Positions 7,759 to 63,810 of a stretch of 64,000 bases of DNA are shown piece after piece. The stretch is taken from positions 62,001-126,000 of IMG/VR virus record IMGVR_UViG_3300004151_000006; one strand, given 5' to 3'. The translations under genes and the position numbers were made by a program. The notes below the pieces were generated by a model. It did not search any database and was not told the DNA's origin. It saw only the letters and a list, made by a program, of their open reading frames with translations. How positions within the stretch are numbered: the stretch's first letter is position 1; the number at the start of each line of letters is the position of its first letter.

Positions 7759-8262
7759 ATGCAGGCTCTAGCTACTACAATCGATGTGGTGTCTCAGGCT
7801 GATGATATTAATCGTCTCTATGATGAATCTATGGAGATAGTCACACACTACTCTATTGAGCACATGCACTTCGAATTTGAGACGATCAATCCAAAACAAT
7901 ATAGACTGGTCCATCTGGATATGCCACGTGTGGGCGAATGGGATCAGATCTTTGTACAGGTACTCGGTGATATACTCTCGTATAATCAGTATCTCAAGTT
8001 GTATCCTACTTTTATAAAGAATCAATCTGCTACCAAACGTGTGATCTTTCCTTCCAATACTTACATTAACAAATTTAAATATGATACATCTCGAATGGAT
8101 GCTGTGATTGAATGGCCCACCGTAGAAGATACTTCTATGTATCAAGAGCGTACTGTGATTTATACACCCATTTTACTTAAAATTATGCAAAGTATCCACG
8201 GTATGTTGACTAATCTCCATCAGCTACATAATCAATACAATCGTATACATCTCGTCAAATAG
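7759..8262 (+). CDS. hypothetical protein
   Basis: AAGGA RBS; start revised from 7735. Confidence 0.65.
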   Translation: MQALATTIDVVSQADDINRLYDESMEIVTHYSIEHMHFEFETINPKQYRLVHLDMPRVGEWDQIFVQVLGDILSYNQYLKLYPTFIKNQSATKRVIFPSNTYINKFKYDTSRMDAVIEWPTVEDTSMYQERTVIYTPILLKIMQSIHGMLTNLHQLHNQYNRIHLVK

Positions 8263-58494: not shown

Positions 58495-59211
58495 ATGGAT
58501 TTTAATTTTTCAACACACCGAAAACTTAATTCATTAAAGAAACAAATTGTAGATGAATTTAATGAATATTTAAAACCTAGAAACATTCTGTTAAATGATC
58601 ATTCTCCTCTTGCAGTACAAATGGAATTGCATGCTGTAAATCTGAAGTTTATTGAAATACCTTTAAATGATGATGATGTGATGAATGCTAGACTGGTAGT
58701 TATGGCTGATAAAGAAATATTTGATATTTATTTCAATACACATAATAAAGCTACTGAATTCTATGAAAGTATTGATAAACCAACACAGGCAGCAATGGTG
58801 TTTGGTATGTGCACAATGTCAATTCCATCTGATTTACAATGTTTGATTCGTGAACTTAATGATAAAAATAATAAGCTATATCAGATGTTTATTGAATTGT
58901 GTATGGAAATCCGATTAGCCAATCTGGAATTGATGATAATTAATAGTTTAGTGAATGTTGATAGATATGAGTTGGGAAAAGATATTCAAGATTTACTCAA
59001 TACTGGAGAACATGCATATATTCATGTATTGATTGATTATTGGTTTGGTACCATTACACTAGAAGACTTAAAGAGTAAAGTTGGAAAGGCGGACAAATAT
59101 GGAATATTGAAGATCATTGATAGGGTTATTATTTCTAAATATCAAATCTATCGTGAATATCAAGATCATTATACTGATTATTTTCAAAGTCACTCTGCAA
59201 AGGATAGATAG
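58495..59211 (+). CDS. hypothetical protein
   Basis: AAGGAG RBS; start revised from 58456. Confidence 0.7.
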   Translation: MDFNFSTHRKLNSLKKQIVDEFNEYLKPRNILLNDHSPLAVQMELHAVNLKFIEIPLNDDDVMNARLVVMADKEIFDIYFNTHNKATEFYESIDKPTQAAMVFGMCTMSIPSDLQCLIRELNDKNNKLYQMFIELCMEIRLANLELMIINSLVNVDRYELGKDIQDLLNTGEHAYIHVLIDYWFGTITLEDLKSKVGKADKYGILKIIDRVIISKYQIYREYQDHYTDYFQSHSAKDR

Positions 59212-59240
59212 TGTGGGCCCCATATGGGGCCCACACTATC
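59207..59240. repeat. 34-bp perfect palindrome between convergent genes
   Basis: GATAGTGTGGGCCCCAT|ATGGGGCCCACACTATC. Confidence 0.95.
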
Positions 59241-59261: not shown

Positions 59262-60164
59262 TTATCTACTACCTGGAAAAGGTTTATCCCATTTACATTC
59301 AGTAGCTGCAGTATGTATCCAATATACACCATCAGATAACCTTTCAGCTTTTCCAGTCTTTAAGTATTTTTCAATATCTTTAAAAATATGTTCACACTCA
59401 TTAGCTCTTTCCCAAGCAAATCCAACTGTACCAACATATATACCTTCTTCAAAGAGTGGTGTCTTTAAGACATCAAGAACGATGAGTTTATCACCAATAT
59501 ATCCACATTCTACATATCTACATTGTTTACCTTGATCTCGAGCATGAAAATCAGTATTCATACAAAGATCACCAAAAGTATGTCTGATTTTTTTAGATTC
59601 TCTAAAAGCATCTAAGAGTTCAGCATCATCCATACCAACAATGTCACAAGTATCTTTCATACCAAAAAAGAAATCACACCAAGTGGGATCACAATATAAA
59701 TATCTACCTTTACTATCTTTGTACCAAACATATCCACCAGCAGCAGCTACCATAGCTTTGATGATCTTATTTTGTCTACGTAATGCATCATATTTAAATT
59801 CTTTTCTAACTAAGCCATCACTATACCAACACAATGAAGAGAAAATAATAAATATCATACCTTCTAAGAGTGGCCAAATCAAATCATGGAATTCATCATT
59901 TGGTACAAAGATATCAATAGTCTGTGCCATCAAATATGAAATAGATAACATGATAGTACCCCAAGTAAGCTTACTAATATAGACTAATGAAACAGGATTC
60001 TCATTGGGTTGATTGAAGGGATAAATCTTTCTAATGTTTTGATAATATATATAAAGTTTGATACCTAAAGTAAGTGCCACAATAGCTGCCACTAATGAAA
60101 ATGAATATTGTATTAATTTTGTGATCACTGGATGAAGATCAATGAATATGTTAATGGGAAACAT
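59262..60164 (-). CDS. membrane-anchored PAS-domain protein (3 TM + PAS, no output domain)
   Basis: VWYKDSKGRYLYCD...DIVGMDD...LDVLKTPL..GIYVGTVGFA is a PAS/PAC pattern. Confidence 0.8.
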   Translation of the reverse strand: MFPINIFIDLHPVITKLIQYSFSLVAAIVALTLGIKLYIYYQNIRKIYPFNQPNENPVSLVYISKLTWGTIMLSISYLMAQTIDIFVPNDEFHDLIWPLLEGMIFIIFSSLCWYSDGLVRKEFKYDALRRQNKIIKAMVAAAGGYVWYKDSKGRYLYCDPTWCDFFFGMKDTCDIVGMDDAELLDAFRESKKIRHTFGDLCMNTDFHARDQGKQCRYVECGYIGDKLIVLDVLKTPLFEEGIYVGTVGFAWERANECEHIFKDIEKYLKTGKAERLSDGVYWIHTAATECKWDKPFPGSR

Positions 60165-60786
60165 CTTTTTTACTCTTAGATTTGGTGGTAGTTTTCTTTT
60201 TAGGTGTTACATCTTTAACTGGAGTATCTTTTACTGTAGGCGTGATTTTCTTAGATTTAGTTGATGGTGTTTTCTTTTTTGGTATAGTTACTTTTTTAGG
60301 AGGATAATCACAAAAAGTATCATCTGAATCAATAGATAAACCACCATCTTCATCATCTAAGAATTCTTTTGGGATCCTTTTAGGTGAACGATATTCAGTT
60401 TCGTCATATTCATGTTGCATTTTACGTAAAGCATATTTTTCACGTTTACTCATTGGTACAATCCGTTCAATGATTAAATGAATAATGGTAATAAAATGTC
60501 TATCCCAGTGGGTGGATGTAAATCCAACAGCAATACATAGAATCATTTTCATATGAGCAGAAATAGCAGTCCATTCATAAACAGCTAACATAGTCATCCA
60601 ACAAAAAACAATACTCACACCACAGTTACTGAAGATCTCTTTAAATTTAGTCTCACTGTTATTTTTATTTCTCCAGTTAGCAGAAAAGTATCCTGTGACA
60701 GTACCGATAAATGTGGGTATAGATAAGATCTTGAATAAATAACTGAAAGTGAGGACTTCATCCATGTTCTGGACTGGCTGTGACAT
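60151..60786 (-). CDS. holin-like membrane protein with long charged C-terminal tail
   Basis: Three short TMs, then acidic and Lys/Thr/Pro-rich tail. Confidence 0.45.
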   Translation of the reverse strand: MSQPVQNMDEVLTFSYLFKILSIPTFIGTVTGYFSANWRNKNNSETKFKEIFSNCGVSIVFCWMTMLAVYEWTAISAHMKMILCIAVGFTSTHWDRHFITIIHLIIERIVPMSKREKYALRKMQHEYDETEYRSPKRIPKEFLDDEDGGLSIDSDDTFCDYPPKKVTIPKKKTPSTKSKKITPTVKDTPVKDVTPKKKTTTKSKSKKDVSH

Positions 60787-60801
60787 GTGTTTTCACCTAT
60801 C

Positions 60802-61473
60802 CTATTTCGGGACTAAAAATAAAAAATAGGACCAGGTACCAACTAAAAACACTAATGAATATGAAACTACATTGATAACATTTTTAATGATCAACCAAGA
60901 TACTATTTCCACTAATGCCATAAACATAGATAACAAACTGACAGCCAACAAATATTGATCTGGATCCCATGTGTGAAAATGATTACCATATGTATACATG
61001 CCATGACTAAATACCATACCAACAAAGATACTAGCTAATACGAGGTACCATTTGAAAGTGGCATTTACTCCAGATTTACCCCGATTATCCAACTGACATT
61101 TACAAGATGTAGACATATAGACTTGAGCTGCCCACAATATCAATGTAGTACACATGGGTGAAATAAAGAAATTGATATATGCTTCCATTGGTTTTTTAAT
61201 AGCAAATTCTGGATCTAATGATAATGAAATCCGCACAATAGATACACCAATTTGTATGATCGGTATAAGTGCACATACTAGTATCATTAATTTGACTATA
61301 GGTGCAGTATGTCTAGTTGGGTGTAAGCGTAAGAATACAAATTGCAAAAGTAAAAAAATACATCCCAATAATTGGATGACTATCAAATACCTATATAAAA
61401 ATACTGGATCTATCCAATATTGCATATTAGCCGTTGGGCTACAACCACAGACAATACTTTCAACAATAGACAC
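60802..61473 (-). CDS. polytopic membrane protein (~6 TM)
   Basis: AGGAGG RBS; hydrophobic segments; Cys pairs. Confidence 0.7.
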   Translation of the reverse strand: MSIVESIVCGCSPTANMQYWIDPVFLYRYLIVIQLLGCIFLLLQFVFLRLHPTRHTAPIVKLMILVCALIPIIQIGVSIVRISLSLDPEFAIKKPMEAYINFFISPMCTTLILWAAQVYMSTSCKCQLDNRGKSGVNATFKWYLVLASIFVGMVFSHGMYTYGNHFHTWDPDQYLLAVSLLSMFMALVEIVSWLIIKNVINVVSYSLVFLVGTWSYFLFLVPK

Positions 61474-61515
61474 ATATCACCTCCTGGGTGTGATGAATCA
61501 AAAGACTGTTTAGAT

Positions 61516-61884
61516 TTAAAAAGTAATAGTACTGATGTTTTCAGAAGAAGCGATCTCCATGGCAGTGACACCAGTGCCAAGGATGAATCCAGGAGGAAGA
61601 TCATCTTCACTGATATTACGTGTAGCACAGCAGGGTTTACAACACAGGATCTCAATACCGCTATCCAAGATGACTTTCATGTGATCAGCCATCTGATCAC
61701 CAGTGACAGCTTTCACATTCGCTGTCACCTGGGGGTTGGTAAAATAGACTGCATCATCCACCAACATGATACCTTTAAGGGTACCGCTGTCTTTGGCCAG
61801 CTTTGCAAACTGAAAACAGCGAGTAGCCTTTGTGGGATTTTCAGGACCACAGGTCAAAATGAAAAAGAGTGATTGACGGGTCAT
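61516..61884 (-). CDS. DsrE/TusD-like sulfur-carrier protein
   Basis: AGGAG RBS; LTCGPEN...LVDDAVY...ILCCKPCCATRNI...TITF. Confidence 0.8.
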   Translation of the reverse strand: MTRQSLFFILTCGPENPTKATRCFQFAKLAKDSGTLKGIMLVDDAVYFTNPQVTANVKAVTGDQMADHMKVILDSGIEILCCKPCCATRNISEDDLPPGFILGTGVTAMEIASSENISTITF

Positions 61885-61903
61885 GTGTATAACTCCTATC
61901 GGA

Positions 61904-62275
61904 TCACAGATCCGTAGTCGATTGAAAAAGATCAGAATGATTTTCAACAGTTTTATTGTCCGGATGATCCACTTTATAACTCACTAAATACATACTGATA
62001 ATGTATACCCACAATGCACCATGCTTACAGAAGAAAGGTATCCACCATCCAGCATTGAGATTACCCTCTATCATCACAATAGATTGATAACATTGCATGA
62101 TAGAGAGAAACATTACACTGACCACCATAAAGTGCATATACTTATTATTCTCTTTATTTTGAGTCTTAAATTTAGTAGAGATCCAAATAGATATTCCGAC
62201 ACAAAAAACTGATGATGCTAAGAGATAAAAATATCCAATCTTAATCAGATTGACTTCCATTGATGTGAATTGCAT
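61904..62275 (-). CDS. membrane protein (3 TM)
   Basis: GGAGG RBS before ATG 62275. Confidence 0.65.
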   Translation of the reverse strand: MQFTSMEVNLIKIGYFYLLASSVFCVGISIWISTKFKTQNKENNKYMHFMVVSVMFLSIMQCYQSIVMIEGNLNAGWWIPFFCKHGALWVYIISMYLVSYKVDHPDNKTVENHSDLFQSTTDL

Positions 62276-62371
62276 TACACCTCCCATGTGAAACACATTC
62301 TTGCCCCAACTCATAAGATATTTTTTAAAGACCTATCGTATGAGTAAATATTTTAAGGAGGGATATATCCC

Positions 62372-63118
62372 ATGACTACAAATTTTCAAGCTGCTAAAGC
62401 AGAATTGGGTGATATTGAGGGATTCTATTCTAATGATTCAAAAGATAGGGGTGGTGAAACTCTTTATGGTTGGGCAAGAAATTATCATCCTGAGATTGAA
62501 TTTTGGTCTAAACTTGACCAATATAAAAAACAGTATGGTGGTTGGAATGATAAGTGTGCTGCTGCAGTAAAGGCTGATCCATATTTTAAAGAAGTATCTG
62601 ATAGAGAATATAAGAAGCAATATTGGGATTTCTTTGATGGTGATAATATACCCTATTCATTATCCCTTGAAATTTTTGAGGTTTGTGTCAATCTTGGCGT
62701 TGGTGGAGGAGTGAGATTGCTTCAAGCCGTGCTCAATGGTCACAATTATGAAAATAAATTTGGTATTGATTTGAAGATGCCTTATGATGGGGTGTTTGGT
62801 GATAATACACGAAAAATGTTCAAAGCTATGTTAGCTGCTGGGTATGCTGAATCTATTCAATATGGGATAAATGCTGAGCAGGGACATTATTATCGGACAA
62901 GGACTGAAGAAAATATAGATAAACGAAAGTATTATCGGGGTTGGTTACGTACTCGGTGTAAAGCATCTTTTAAACAAAATCCTGGAGACATTGTTGTAAC
63001 AAATACTGCACCTGTGATAGTTGAATCTAATTCAACCAATCTATTTACAGAAGATGATATTAATAATATTAAGATGTTGACTGAAACGTTACAATCAATC
63101 TTAAAGAAAGTGATGTAA
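62372..63118 (+). CDS. GH108 lysozyme (endolysin) with peptidoglycan-binding domain
   Basis: EGFYSNDSKDRGGETLYG, YKKQYW, LLQAVLN..DGVFG..T, YYRGWL. Confidence 0.88.
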   Translation: MTTNFQAAKAELGDIEGFYSNDSKDRGGETLYGWARNYHPEIEFWSKLDQYKKQYGGWNDKCAAAVKADPYFKEVSDREYKKQYWDFFDGDNIPYSLSLEIFEVCVNLGVGGGVRLLQAVLNGHNYENKFGIDLKMPYDGVFGDNTRKMFKAMLAAGYAESIQYGINAEQGHYYRTRTEENIDKRKYYRGWLRTRCKASFKQNPGDIVVTNTAPVIVESNSTNLFTEDDINNIKMLTETLQSILKKVM

Positions 63119-63190: not shown

Positions 63191-63223
63191 ATAGCTCTGG
63201 GTGCACAGTGCACCCAGAGCTAT
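63191..63223. repeat. 16-bp stem/1-nt loop followed by early promoter (63241-63251)
   Basis: ATAGCTCTGGGTGCAC-A-GTGCACCCAGAGCTAT. Confidence 0.92.
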
Positions 63224-63270: not shown

Positions 63271-63810
63271 ATGATCAAATATAAACACGGTGACATAGTT
63301 GAAGCACTGATTAAAACTACAGATATAGATGTATGTTTTCACCAAGCAAATTGTTTCTGCAATCTTGGAGCGGGCATAGCTAAACAATTAGCAGCTGTAT
63401 TTCCAGCATTGGTGGATGTAGATGATACTACTTCTGTAGGTGATAAAAATAAATTAGGTACATTTACGTATGCTGAATTTTATCAATCACATCAATTTAG
63501 AATCTACAATTTATATGGTCAATGGGCATTTAGATATGGTCTTATCTATAAATGGATAGATGGAGTAAAACATCAATTTACAATACCTGAAGAATATGAT
63601 GAAAATGGTCTTAAGCCCATGACTTCACTCCCGCATCTAAGACAGGCTATCGAAGGTATGATCAATCATGTCTGTGGTGTCAAACATGACTTAAGATTTG
63701 CTACAGTGAAGATTGGTGCTGGTCGTGGTGGTGCTGATTGGAATAGTCAAGTATATCCCATGCTAGAGGAATTGTTTGATGGTTTGGATTTGACAGTATA
63801 TAGATTTTAA
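63271..63810 (+). CDS. macrodomain ADP-ribose hydrolase (Poa1p/TARG1-like)
   Basis: GDI, HQANCFCNLGAGIAKQL, NLYGQ, KIGAGRGGADW. Confidence 0.88.
   Translation: MIKYKHGDIVEALIKTTDIDVCFHQANCFCNLGAGIAKQLAAVFPALVDVDDTTSVGDKNKLGTFTYAEFYQSHQFRIYNLYGQWAFRYGLIYKWIDGVKHQFTIPEEYDENGLKPMTSLPHLRQAIEGMINHVCGVKHDLRFATVKIGAGRGGADWNSQVYPMLEELFDGLDLTVYRF

What the first reader, a model, noticed from the sequence alone, without database searches (positions are those of the whole stretch)
59262..63118. Membrane operon with DsrE and an orphan PAS sensor, divergent from the endolysin: candidate signal-gated lysis system
Seen: five tightly packed minus-strand genes (3-TM protein, DsrE-like Cys protein, ~6-TM protein, holin-like 3-TM protein with charged tail, 3-TM + PAS protein with no kinase or output domain). 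They share a ~100-bp divergent intergenic region with a GH108 lysozyme, and the block is bounded by palindromes at 59207 and 63191. Established: DsrE/TusD proteins carry persulfides; PAS domains sense redox or ligands; a GH108 lacking a signal peptide needs a holin. Inference: a lysis cassette whose timing is gated by sulfur/redox state through a PAS antiholin-like regulator. I know of no described equivalent.
Basis: partly seen in the sequence, partly recalled or inferred. Interest (0 to 1): 0.78.

Follow-up and report, generated by a model that had tools for sequence, protein, structure and literature searches.

The report
Jumbo-phage lysis cassette with redox accessories
This is the cell-bursting (lysis) gene cluster of an uncultivated 287-kb freshwater phage, in which the usual wall-cutting enzyme and membrane hole-former travel with two undescribed membrane proteins, a small redox-type (CxxC) protein and a membrane-anchored PAS sensor, so lysis timing may respond to the host's redox state, though nothing here tests that.

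Summary
Five operon-packed minus-strand genes (59262-62314) lie back to back with a soluble GH108 muramidase (62372-63118), and GC-rich palindromes bound both units. The window is part of a 286,688-bp IMG/VR phage from freshwater.

- **gB** is a probable LydA-type holin. The evidence is PHROG holin E=5e-5, PF16083 on its 6160-bp-contig ortholog, and PF16083 on the gene in the same position in other phages.
- **gD** is a DsrE-fold protein with an invariant C-K-P-C. This matches the CxxC/UxxC "DsrE-like" thiol-oxidoreductase and YchN branch, not the TusD/DsrE persulfide carriers.
- **gA** has three TM helices plus a cytoplasmic PAS fold. Foldseek gives 47 PAS hits, and there are four invariant Cys and two invariant His.
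- **gE and gC** are new families with no Pfam match. gC has no fold match.

The conserved core is gE-gC-holin, adjacent in 8 of 9 lineages seen (LydA-type by a family match in 5) and with gE and gC fused in one. DsrE-like genes join this core in three lineages. The PAS gene and the adjacent GH108 occur only in this clade.

"Lysis cassette" is well supported. "Redox/PAS-gated lysis" is plausible but untested. Persulfide chemistry is the less likely reading. I rate it a new variant of a known kind, interest about 0.6.

The parts
62372..63118 (+). GH108 muramidase with PG_binding_3 domain. It is a soluble endolysin with no signal or SAR segment. A ~40-aa C-terminal extension is absent from relatives, which are 207-209 aa.
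   Evidence: PF05838 E=2.2e-11, PF09374 E=3.6e-5, phrog_315 endolysin E=3.2e-23. No hydrophobic window. No second GH108, SLT or T4-lysozyme family hit in the genome; other lysin families not searched.
62276..62371 (.). Divergent intergenic spacer between gE and GH108. It is 96 bp with the SD-backed gE start and 57 bp with the first ATG.
   Evidence: It lacks the genome's repeated promoter-like motifs.
61904..62275 (-). gE: 123-aa, 3-TM protein of an undescribed family. Invariant residues are W-W-x-P-x-x-C-K (62024-62047) and L-S-x-x-Q.
   Evidence: Homologs sit next to gC-family genes in L010, L014, L016, L017-19, L020 and L021, and are fused to gC in P0025. No Pfam or PHROG family.
61516..61884 (-). 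gD: 122-aa cytoplasmic DsrE-fold protein with invariant C-K-P-C (61630-61641).
   Evidence: PF02635 E=1.6e-10. Atlas model pLDDT 0.92, TM 0.91 to DsrE clusters. Alignment A1. YchN C-K-T-C alignment. GC 44% against 32-35% for its neighbours.
60802..61473 (-). gC: 6-TM protein of an undescribed family. The likely start is 61425. Conserved residues are Q74, R81, S-P at 105-106, W114, G152, E189 and G212.
   Evidence: 17 cluster representatives among 1.84 billion proteins. Alignment A3. AF2 pLDDT 86.8 with six helices. No fold match in PDB, AFDB, Atlas or VIA-wide. No Pfam family.
60151..60786 (-). gB: probable LydA-type holin. Three TM segments span roughly residues 13-100. A conserved acidic motif and a Lys/Thr/Pro-rich cytoplasmic tail span residues ~101-211.
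   Evidence: phrog_199 holin E=5e-5. The ortholog on the 6160-bp contig carries PF16083. Genes in the same position hit PF16083 at 1e-13, 1.3e-6, 8e-4 and 5e-3. hhalign to those genes gives E=2e-4, probability 46%. Tail conservation is shown.
59262..60164 (-). gA: three TM helices (residues ~12-113), a linker helix, then a cytoplasmic PAS fold (59310-59747) with no output domain. C158, C163, C173, C201, H195 and H207 are invariant. Its start overlaps the end of gB by 14 nt.
   Evidence: The gB/gA overlap is conserved in L002 and in the 6160-bp contig.
59207..59240 (.). GC-rich perfect palindrome acting as a bidirectional terminator-like hairpin. It closes the five-gene unit and the convergent plus-strand unit.
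63191..63223 (.). GC-rich palindrome, terminator-like, closing the single-gene GH108 unit.

Best explanation
The block is the lysis cassette of an uncultivated 287-kb freshwater phage.

**Shown by sequence and homology:**
- A soluble GH108 muramidase, which cannot cross the inner membrane on its own.
- A divergent five-gene transcription unit that encodes a LydA-type holin candidate (gB).
- Two integral membrane proteins (gE with 3 TM, gC with 6 TM) that sit immediately upstream of such holins in many phage lineages.
- A DsrE-fold protein with a CxxC motif.
- A membrane-anchored cytoplasmic PAS protein whose gene overlaps the holin gene.

**Inferred mechanism:**
1. gB accumulates in the inner membrane and, at a set time or on loss of membrane potential, forms holes that release GH108 to the wall.
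2. gE and gC form a membrane complex with the holin and set or restrain its triggering, acting as a co-holin or antiholin-like partner.
3. The CxxC DsrE/YchN-like protein acts as a cytoplasmic thiol-redox component on this complex. The conserved Cys of gE or the cytoplasmic tail of gB are candidate targets.
4. In this clade, the Cys/His-rich PAS protein is made in step with the holin through translational coupling. It binds the holin through its TM helices and adds a second cytoplasmic input, such as redox state, O2, a metal or a ligand.

**My probabilities:** lysis cassette with gB as holin, about 0.75. gE and gC act on lysis, about 0.5. DsrE-like and/or PAS tune lysis timing, about 0.35.
For: - GH108 and PG_binding_3 are present, with no TM segment. 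No second GH108, SLT or T4-lysozyme family hit in the genome; other lysin families not searched.
- Synteny within the clade is GH108<->gE-DsrE-gC-holin-PAS.
- The gE-gC-holin trio appears in L014, L015, L016, L017-19, L020 and L021. gE and gC are fused in P0025.
- DsrE-like genes lie inside the module in three lineages whose DsrEs are only 31-42% identical to each other. The window clade is closer (44-53%) to a free-standing cellular homolog.
- This DsrE has no hit in 50,697 GenBank phages or in IMG/VR, so the repeated linkage is not a background effect.
- The CxxC aligns with YchN CKTC and with TGA-L-P-C in L020. UxxC DsrE-like selenoproteins are classed as thiol-oxidoreductase homologs (PMC9312934, PMC1794560).
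- PAS fold. Invariant Cys and His. The positive-inside rule places the PAS domain in the cytoplasm (sequence).
- The 14-20 nt gB/gA overlap is conserved.
- There is a precedent for a cytoplasmic regulator acting on a jumbo-phage holin's cytoplasmic domain: phiKZ gp142/gp143 (PMC12894885).
Against: - There are no functional or expression data, and no RNA run was listed.
- gB itself does not reach PF16083, even at E<=1. Its link to the LydA-like genes in the same position in other phages is weak (hhalign probability 46%).
- The gE-gC fusion gene in L012 has no holin, lysin, DsrE or PAS beside it, so gE and gC can function away from a holin.
- In distant lineages no endolysin is adjacent within the contigs seen.
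- The predicted position of the gE Cys is near the periplasmic face, out of reach of a cytoplasmic DsrE.
- PAS occurs in only one clade. Its cofactor or ligand is unknown, and the AF2 model is poor (pLDDT 60).
- No spanin pair was identified in the block.
Confidence: 0.55

Rival explanations
1. gE, gC and the DsrE-like protein form a membrane redox or transport module that serves the infected cell. It could be an auxiliary metabolic function, membrane remodelling or superinfection exclusion. On this view it sits beside the holin only because membrane and late genes cluster, and it does not affect lysis timing.
For: - The gE-gC fusion stands alone, without a holin or lysin, in a tubulin-encoding jumbo phage.
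- gC is a confident 6-TM bundle of transporter-like size.
- The DsrE gene is a compositional outlier (44% GC), like an acquired host gene. Its nearest cellular homolog is free-standing.
Against: - In 8 of 9 independent contexts the gene directly after gC is a small TM protein; it matches LydA/PHROG holin models in 5 of them.
- Intergenic gaps are tight or overlapping.
- gC has no transporter fold or family match.
Confidence: 0.2
2. The DsrE-like gene is a sulfur-relay auxiliary metabolic gene. It would carry persulfide for tRNA thiolation or sulfur oxidation, as TusD or DsrE do, and would have nothing to do with lysis.
For: - The Pfam DsrE match.
- Atlas structural neighbours include archaeal TusA-DsrE fusions.
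- dsrE has been listed among viral sulfur AMGs in groundwater viromes (PMC11310336).
Against: - No NCBIfam TusD or DsrE equivalog hit.
- No DsrF/H or TusB/C partner is encoded in the block (ORF list; Pfam); the rest of the genome was not searched for them.
- The CxxC/UxxC motif is typical of thiol oxidoreductase-type 'DsrE-like' proteins and YchN (PMC9312934).
- It is embedded in the holin module in three separate lineages.
Confidence: 0.08
3. gA is a general phage membrane PAS sensor, or a decoy, acting on a host signalling pathway. It is only co-transcribed with the holin.
For: - ESM-Atlas holds large viral clusters of ~233-aa TM+PAS_4 proteins. Stand-alone membrane PAS proteins are therefore common in phages beyond this cassette.
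- gA occurs in only one clade of the module.
Against: - The start overlap with the holin gene is conserved in three relatives.
- There is no output domain.
- A soluble homolog, P0005, keeps the same Cys/His set, which points to a conserved sensing chemistry rather than a decoy.
Confidence: 0.12

Closest known systems
Phage P1 lysis system (LydA holin, LydB antiholin, Lyz endolysin; Pfam PF16083 Phage_holin_3_3)
   Same: The holin candidate and its counterparts in the same position in other phages belong to, or border on, the LydA family. The holin is accompanied by extra regulatory genes.
   Different: - gB itself is below the Pfam threshold and carries a ~110-aa charged tail.
- The lysin is a soluble GH108, not a SAR lysozyme.
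- The partners (gE, gC, DsrE-like, PAS) have no P1 counterparts.
phiKZ lysis cassette (gp142 class III holin with a large cytoplasmic domain, plus cytoplasmic regulator gp143; PMC12894885)
   Same: It is a jumbo-phage lysis cluster in which a cytoplasmic protein is proposed to act on the cytoplasmic part of the holin and to change timing.
   Different: - There is no sequence relationship.
- phiKZ has one TM in the holin, a transglycosylase lysin and a clear spanin pair.
- Here there is a 3-TM holin, two extra polytopic proteins, a CxxC protein and a PAS protein.
T4 lysis inhibition (holin T, antiholins RI and RIII)
   Same: It shares the concept of signal-dependent delay of holin triggering, through a membrane-anchored sensor protein plus a cytoplasmic helper.
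   Different: - RI senses from the periplasm and responds to superinfection.
- Here both soluble domains are predicted to be cytoplasmic, and their chemistry points to redox or ligand sensing.
- There is no homology.
DsrE-like UxxC selenoprotein family and E. coli YchN (PDB 1jx7)
   Same: Same DsrE fold. The C/U-x-x-C lies at the same place, aligned.
   Different: Those proteins are cellular and of unknown physiological role. None has been reported in a phage lysis module.
VqmA of vibriophage VP882 (PAS plus HTH; PDB 7dwm)
   Same: It is a phage-encoded PAS sensor that controls when the host is lysed. It is among the top Foldseek matches.
   Different: VqmA is soluble, binds DNA and acts on transcription. 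gA is membrane-anchored with no output domain and is coupled to a holin gene.
CidA/LrgA-CidB/LrgB holin-like pairs
   Same: A small ~3-4-TM protein plus a ~6-TM protein, encoded side by side and occasionally fused.
   Different: There is no Pfam LrgA or LrgB match for any of 7 gE or 17 gC members, and no fold match. The resemblance is one of format only.

Membership tests
GH108 phage muramidase (endolysin) | Pfam PF05838 match above threshold, with the N-terminal E-G-x-Y...D-x-G-G-x-T motif | tested here: met
   44.6 bits against a cut-off of 21.2. The motif I-E-G-F-Y-S-N-D-S-K-D-R-G-G-E-T is visible.
GH108 phage muramidase (endolysin) | Holin dependence: no signal peptide or SAR domain | tested here: met
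   No hydrophobic 19-residue window.
LydA holin family (PF16083, holin superfamily III) | Profile match above the curated threshold | tested here: not met
   gB has no PF16083 hit, even at E<=1. The threshold is met by its 6160-bp-contig ortholog (precomputed) and by the genes in the same position in L015 (28.9 bits) and L020 (51.6 bits). hhalign of gB to those genes gives E=2e-4.
LydA holin family (PF16083, holin superfamily III) | Small protein with 2-3 TM segments and a charged C-terminus, next to an endolysin | tested here: met
   Three hydrophobic segments within residues 13-100, a charged tail, and GH108 1.6 kb away. The 211-aa size is atypical.
Holin (functional class) | Timed, uncoupler-triggerable membrane permeabilisation that releases endolysin | not testable with these tools
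   Needs expression assays.
DsrE/TusD persulfide-relay proteins | DsrE fold (PF02635) | tested here: met
   E=1.6e-10. Atlas TM 0.91.
DsrE/TusD persulfide-relay proteins | Equivalog-level match to TusD or DsrE, with partner subunits (DsrF/H, TusB/C) or TusA nearby | tested here: not met
   No NCBIfam hit. The only PF02635 match in the genome is gD itself.
DsrE-like CxxC/UxxC thiol-oxidoreductase-type family (YchN branch) | C/U-x-x-C at the active-site turn | tested here: met
   C82 and C85 are invariant. They align to YchN C-K-T-C. L020 has TGA-L-P-C. The motif is listed in PMC9312934.
DsrE-like CxxC/UxxC thiol-oxidoreductase-type family (YchN branch) | Redox activity of the dithiol | not testable with these tools
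   Needs biochemistry.
PAS domain | Sequence-profile match | tested here: not met
   No Pfam or NCBIfam PAS hit for gA, for its PAS part alone, or for its homologs.
PAS domain | Five-stranded antiparallel sheet with flanking helices (PAS fold) | tested here: met
   Foldseek gives 47 PDB hits at E<=1e-3, all PAS, with TM by target 0.57-0.67. Atlas features score 0.94 and structure TM is 0.66 to viral PAS_4 clusters. The model is only pLDDT 60.
Antiholin | Binds the holin and delays or alters its triggering | not testable with these tools
   Only gene overlap and co-conservation are available.
LrgA/LrgB (CidA/CidB) | PF03788 or PF04172 match, or a shared fold | tested here: not met
   No hits among 7 gE and 17 gC members at E<=1. 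No fold match.
Spanins | i-spanin (N-terminal TM plus periplasmic coiled coil) with an embedded or adjacent o-spanin lipoprotein | tested here: not met
   None of the five proteins has this format. The only nearby lipobox ORF is at 64193-64345, outside the window.

The most novel reading that the evidence does not exclude
gE, gC and the LydA-type holin form a conserved three-protein holin machine. Its firing would be set by cytoplasmic thiol redox state through a dedicated CxxC (in one relative UxxC) DsrE-fold protein. In this clade a Cys/His-rich, metal-, heme- or Fe-S-binding PAS protein coupled to the holin would add a further input. This would be a redox-sensing lysis clock that lets the phage time its burst to the host's energetic or oxygen status.
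Probability: 0.25. Interest if true: 0.8.

Novelty: new variant of a known kind. Interest (0 to 1): 0.6.

Why it matters
Holin timing is the main determinant of phage burst size. Known timing controls are few: dual-start antiholins, T4 RI/RIII, P1 LydB and phiKZ gp143.

This analysis adds the following:
- Two undescribed membrane protein families that travel with LydA-type holins across diverse uncultivated phages.
- A redox-type DsrE-fold protein recruited to that module at least three times.
- A holin-coupled PAS protein.

If any of these affect triggering, they would form a new class of lysis regulators that link burst timing to host physiology. The result would also give the orphan YchN/"DsrE-like" CxxC family a first functional context.

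All the parts are small, so the hypotheses can be tested directly in E. coli lysis-complementation systems.

Tried and rejected
- **Cultured and IMG/VR relatives.** No similarity in GenBank phages by DNA or protein for the block, gA, gD, gC or P0025. No IMG/VR relatives for gA, gB, A1 or A3. The genome contigs and metagenome-contig scans with A3 could not be run because no stretch was conserved enough.
- **gC as a known fold or family.** Rejected. This covers CcdA/DsbD-like, LrgB, rhodopsin and GPCR-like hits. Foldseek PDB gives best E=0.1, AFDB best E=0.9, Atlas TM<=0.43 and VIA-wide Z<=7.6 with generic bundles only. The ESM feature hits to eukaryotic THH1/GPR137 are below the reliability marks.
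- **CxC motifs of gC as redox sites.** Rejected. They are not conserved, and the N-terminal one is probably untranslated.
- **The TM domain of gA as a paralog of gE, or gE as a paralog of gC.** Rejected (hhalign probability 0.2%).
- **TAG recoding in L002** to explain the in-frame TAG. Rejected, because TAG ends two genes there.
- **SECIS downstream of the L020 TGA.** Not supported. There is no Rfam hit and the fold z-score is -0.2. Selenocysteine against a fresh nonsense mutation stays open.
- **Defence-system membership.** No PADLOC hit for any cassette protein.
- **Shared promoter class with structural genes.** Could not be settled. Neither of the two repeated intergenic motifs occurs in the divergent spacer.
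- **Literature.** Nothing found on DsrE or PAS in lysis cassettes. One apparent hit was 'DsRed'.
- **Plus-strand ORFs inside the block** (for example 61420-61872 and 59641-59982). These are shadows of the minus-strand genes and have no family support.

Full report
**Source.** The window is bases 62001-126000 of a 286,688-bp IMG/VR virus record. CheckV rates it 100% complete, it has 60-bp perfect inverted termini and 35% GC. It was assembled from a freshwater metagenome. It encodes a large terminase and virion proteins. It has no close relative among 50,697 GenBank phages.

**The observation.** The five minus-strand ORFs and the plus-strand GH108 gene are as described.
- Start-site inspection puts gE at 62275, behind GGAGG, which gives a 96-bp divergent spacer.
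- It puts gD at 61884 (122 aa, like all its homologs).
- gC probably starts at 61425. The family begins there, and the L002 ortholog has a stop at codon 18 of the longer frame.
- The genes are separated by 15-90 nt, and gB and gA overlap by 14 nt.
- The flanking palindromes are real. They belong to a set of 103 GC-rich perfect palindromes in this genome, 81 of them intergenic.
- These palindromes define two transcription units, the five-gene unit and GH108 alone. They are not a special feature of this block.

**GH108.**
- It matches PF05838 and PG_binding_3 and has the family's N-terminal catalytic motif.
- It has no hydrophobic segment.
- No second GH108, SLT or T4-lysozyme family hit was found in the genome; other lysin families were not searched.

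**gB, the holin candidate.**
- It hits PHROG 199 'holin' at 5e-5 but not Pfam.
- Its ortholog on a 6160-bp Logan contig carries PF16083.
- The genes in the same position in other phages hit PF16083 at 1e-13 (L020), 1.3e-6 (L015), 8e-4 (L014) and 5e-3 (L016).
- hhalign links gB to these genes at E=2e-4 with probability 46%.
- Its ~110-residue tail has a conserved acidic motif followed by a Lys/Thr/Pro-rich stretch.

**gD, the DsrE-like protein.**
- It is a confident DsrE fold (PF02635 1.6e-10; Atlas pLDDT 0.92).
- It has no TusD or DsrE equivalog match.
- C82 and C85 (C-K-P-C, 61630-61641) are invariant.
- A profile search of the PDB aligns this motif with C-K-T-C of E. coli YchN.
- In L020 the first Cys position is a TGA, and the frame stays open to a family-like C-terminus.
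- 'DsrE-like' proteins with UxxC are a recognised selenoprotein family, classed with thiol oxidoreductase homologs (PMC9312934, PMC1794560).
- A redox dithiol role is therefore better supported than a persulfide carrier role.

**gA, the PAS protein.**
- It has three TM helices. By the positive-inside rule, its C-terminal domain is cytoplasmic.
- That domain is a PAS fold by ESM-Atlas and by Foldseek, with 47 PDB hits, all PAS. These include WalK, BvgS, NifL, LOV, Aer and phage VqmA.
- Four Cys and two His are invariant across five homologs, including a soluble one.
- This hints at a metal, heme or Fe-S cofactor, but that is inference only.

**gE and gC.**
- Neither has a Pfam, PHROG, NCBIfam or PADLOC match.
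- gC gives a confident six-helix model (pLDDT 86.8). It has no fold relative in PDB, AFDB clusters, the ESM Atlas or a VIA-align wide search.

**Comparative context within the clade.**
- One relative, with gA at 62% identity, has the same order GH108<->gE-DsrE-gC-holin-PAS.
- Another has GH108<->gE-DsrE-gC.
- L002 has DsrE-gC-gB-gA.
- L010 has gE-DsrE.

**Comparative context beyond the clade.** An exhaustive HMMER search found only 17 gC-family clusters among 1.84 billion representatives. Nine independent contexts were read.
- In eight of them the gene directly after gC is a small TM protein. It matches LydA or PHROG holin models in five (window clade, L014, L015, L016, L020). The L017-19 (183 aa) and L021 (127 aa) genes have no holin hit.
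- gE-family genes precede gC in all contexts where upstream sequence exists (local HMM E=1e-21 to 1e-22).
- In a tubulin-encoding jumbo-phage contig, gE and gC are fused into one 346-aa protein that stands alone.
- A DsrE-like gene sits inside the module in three lineages. In the window clade and in L016 it lies between gE and gC. In L020 it lies just after the holin.
- These DsrEs are 31-42% identical to each other. The window clade is 44-53% identical to a free-standing cellular homolog on a 63%-GC contig.
- The window's gD is 44% GC in a 32-35% GC neighbourhood.
- This pattern suggests repeated recruitment, but it was not tested with a tree.
- The PAS gene and the adjacent GH108 were seen only in the window's clade.

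**Interpretation.**
- The lysis-cassette reading is well supported.
- The conserved unit is gE-gC-holin. That is a new finding and the best-supported result here.
- The DsrE-like and PAS proteins are lineage-specific additions. Their placement supports a role on the holin complex: both are cytoplasmic, the PAS gene overlaps the holin gene, and the DsrE-like gene has been linked to the module repeatedly.
- That support comes only from genomic association.
- The nearest functional precedents are phiKZ gp143 acting on the cytoplasmic domain of holin gp142 (PMC12894885), T4 RI/RIII and P1 LydB. None is homologous.
- Points against are listed in the Against line. The main ones are the stand-alone gE-gC fusion, the sub-threshold family match of gB, and the lack of any expression data.

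**Verdict.** This is a new variant of a known kind of system. Interest is about 0.6. The most novel reading, a redox-sensing holin clock, has a probability of about 0.25.

Noticed in passing
L020:7981-8328 (TGA at 8209-8211): A DsrE-like gene next to a LydA holin has TGA exactly at the invariant first Cys of C-x-P-C. The frame stays open for 38 more codons to a family-like C-terminus. It may be a selenocysteine (UxxC) protein on a phage-like 123-kb contig, or a one-step nonsense mutation. No SECIS was found by Rfam or by folding.
   Followed up: partly
L012:3360-4400 and L013:685-1725 (protein P0025): A natural fusion of gE-like and gC-like parts (346 aa) lies in a 31%-GC contig that also encodes a tubulin (PhuZ-like). 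No holin, lysin, DsrE or PAS gene is beside it.
   Followed up: partly
window 3714, 16578, 23448, 30294, 41536, 48419, 49801 and about 20 more sites in the genome: A strong promoter-like consensus (tCCAT, about 10 nt, AAATATATATTA[C/T]) has about 28 intergenic copies, all on the plus strand. A second motif, CTATAAGAT(G), occurs at about 12 intergenic sites on both strands. Neither lies in the gE/GH108 spacer, so the cassette's promoter class is unknown.
   Followed up: partly
window 63271-63810 (+): A macro-domain protein lies just downstream of the GH108 terminator (phrog_335 E=1.8e-33, with weak DarG-like hits in NCBIfam and PADLOC). It may be an ADP-ribosylation counter-defence gene.
   Followed up: no
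window 63862-64047 (+), and 64193-64345 (+, just beyond the window): A 61-aa protein with a C-terminal TM anchor and a 50-aa lipoprotein (lipobox L-I-S-C) lie about 1 kb from the lysin. They are the only nearby candidates for outer-membrane disruption (spanin-like) functions. They do not have the classic spanin format.
   Followed up: partly
window 61425-61475 and L002:168-235: Behind a strong AGGAGGTGAT Shine-Dalgarno sequence, ATG and GTG starts overlap in two frames. A 21-codon mini-ORF in the ATG frame is open in both phages and ends at the same TAG. The GTG frame is interrupted by TAG in L002. The true start of gC, and any coupling or reinitiation, is unresolved.
   Followed up: partly
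window 61516-61884: The DsrE-like gene is 44% GC against 32-35% for its five neighbours. This is consistent with acquisition from a higher-GC source. The closest cellular homolog (52% identity) lies on a 63%-GC bacterial contig (L008).
   Followed up: partly
whole genome (G000), including window 59207-59240 and 63191-63223: There are 103 GC-rich perfect palindromes (stem of 10-20 bp, loop of 0-6), mostly intergenic, in a 35%-GC genome. This is a very regular terminator-like punctuation of transcription units.
   Followed up: yes
gA residues 90-288 (window 59301-59897): The ESM Atlas holds two large virus-only clusters (159 and 119 members) of ~233-aa TM+PAS_4 proteins that are structurally similar to gA. 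Membrane-anchored stand-alone PAS proteins may be widespread in phages. Their gene neighbourhoods were not examined.
   Followed up: no
L021:5637-6083: In a 136-kb, 38%-GC phage contig, a DUF5675 protein (E=7.8e-30) lies two genes upstream of the gE-gC-TM-protein trio. It might be that phage's lysin, but this was not tested.
   Followed up: no
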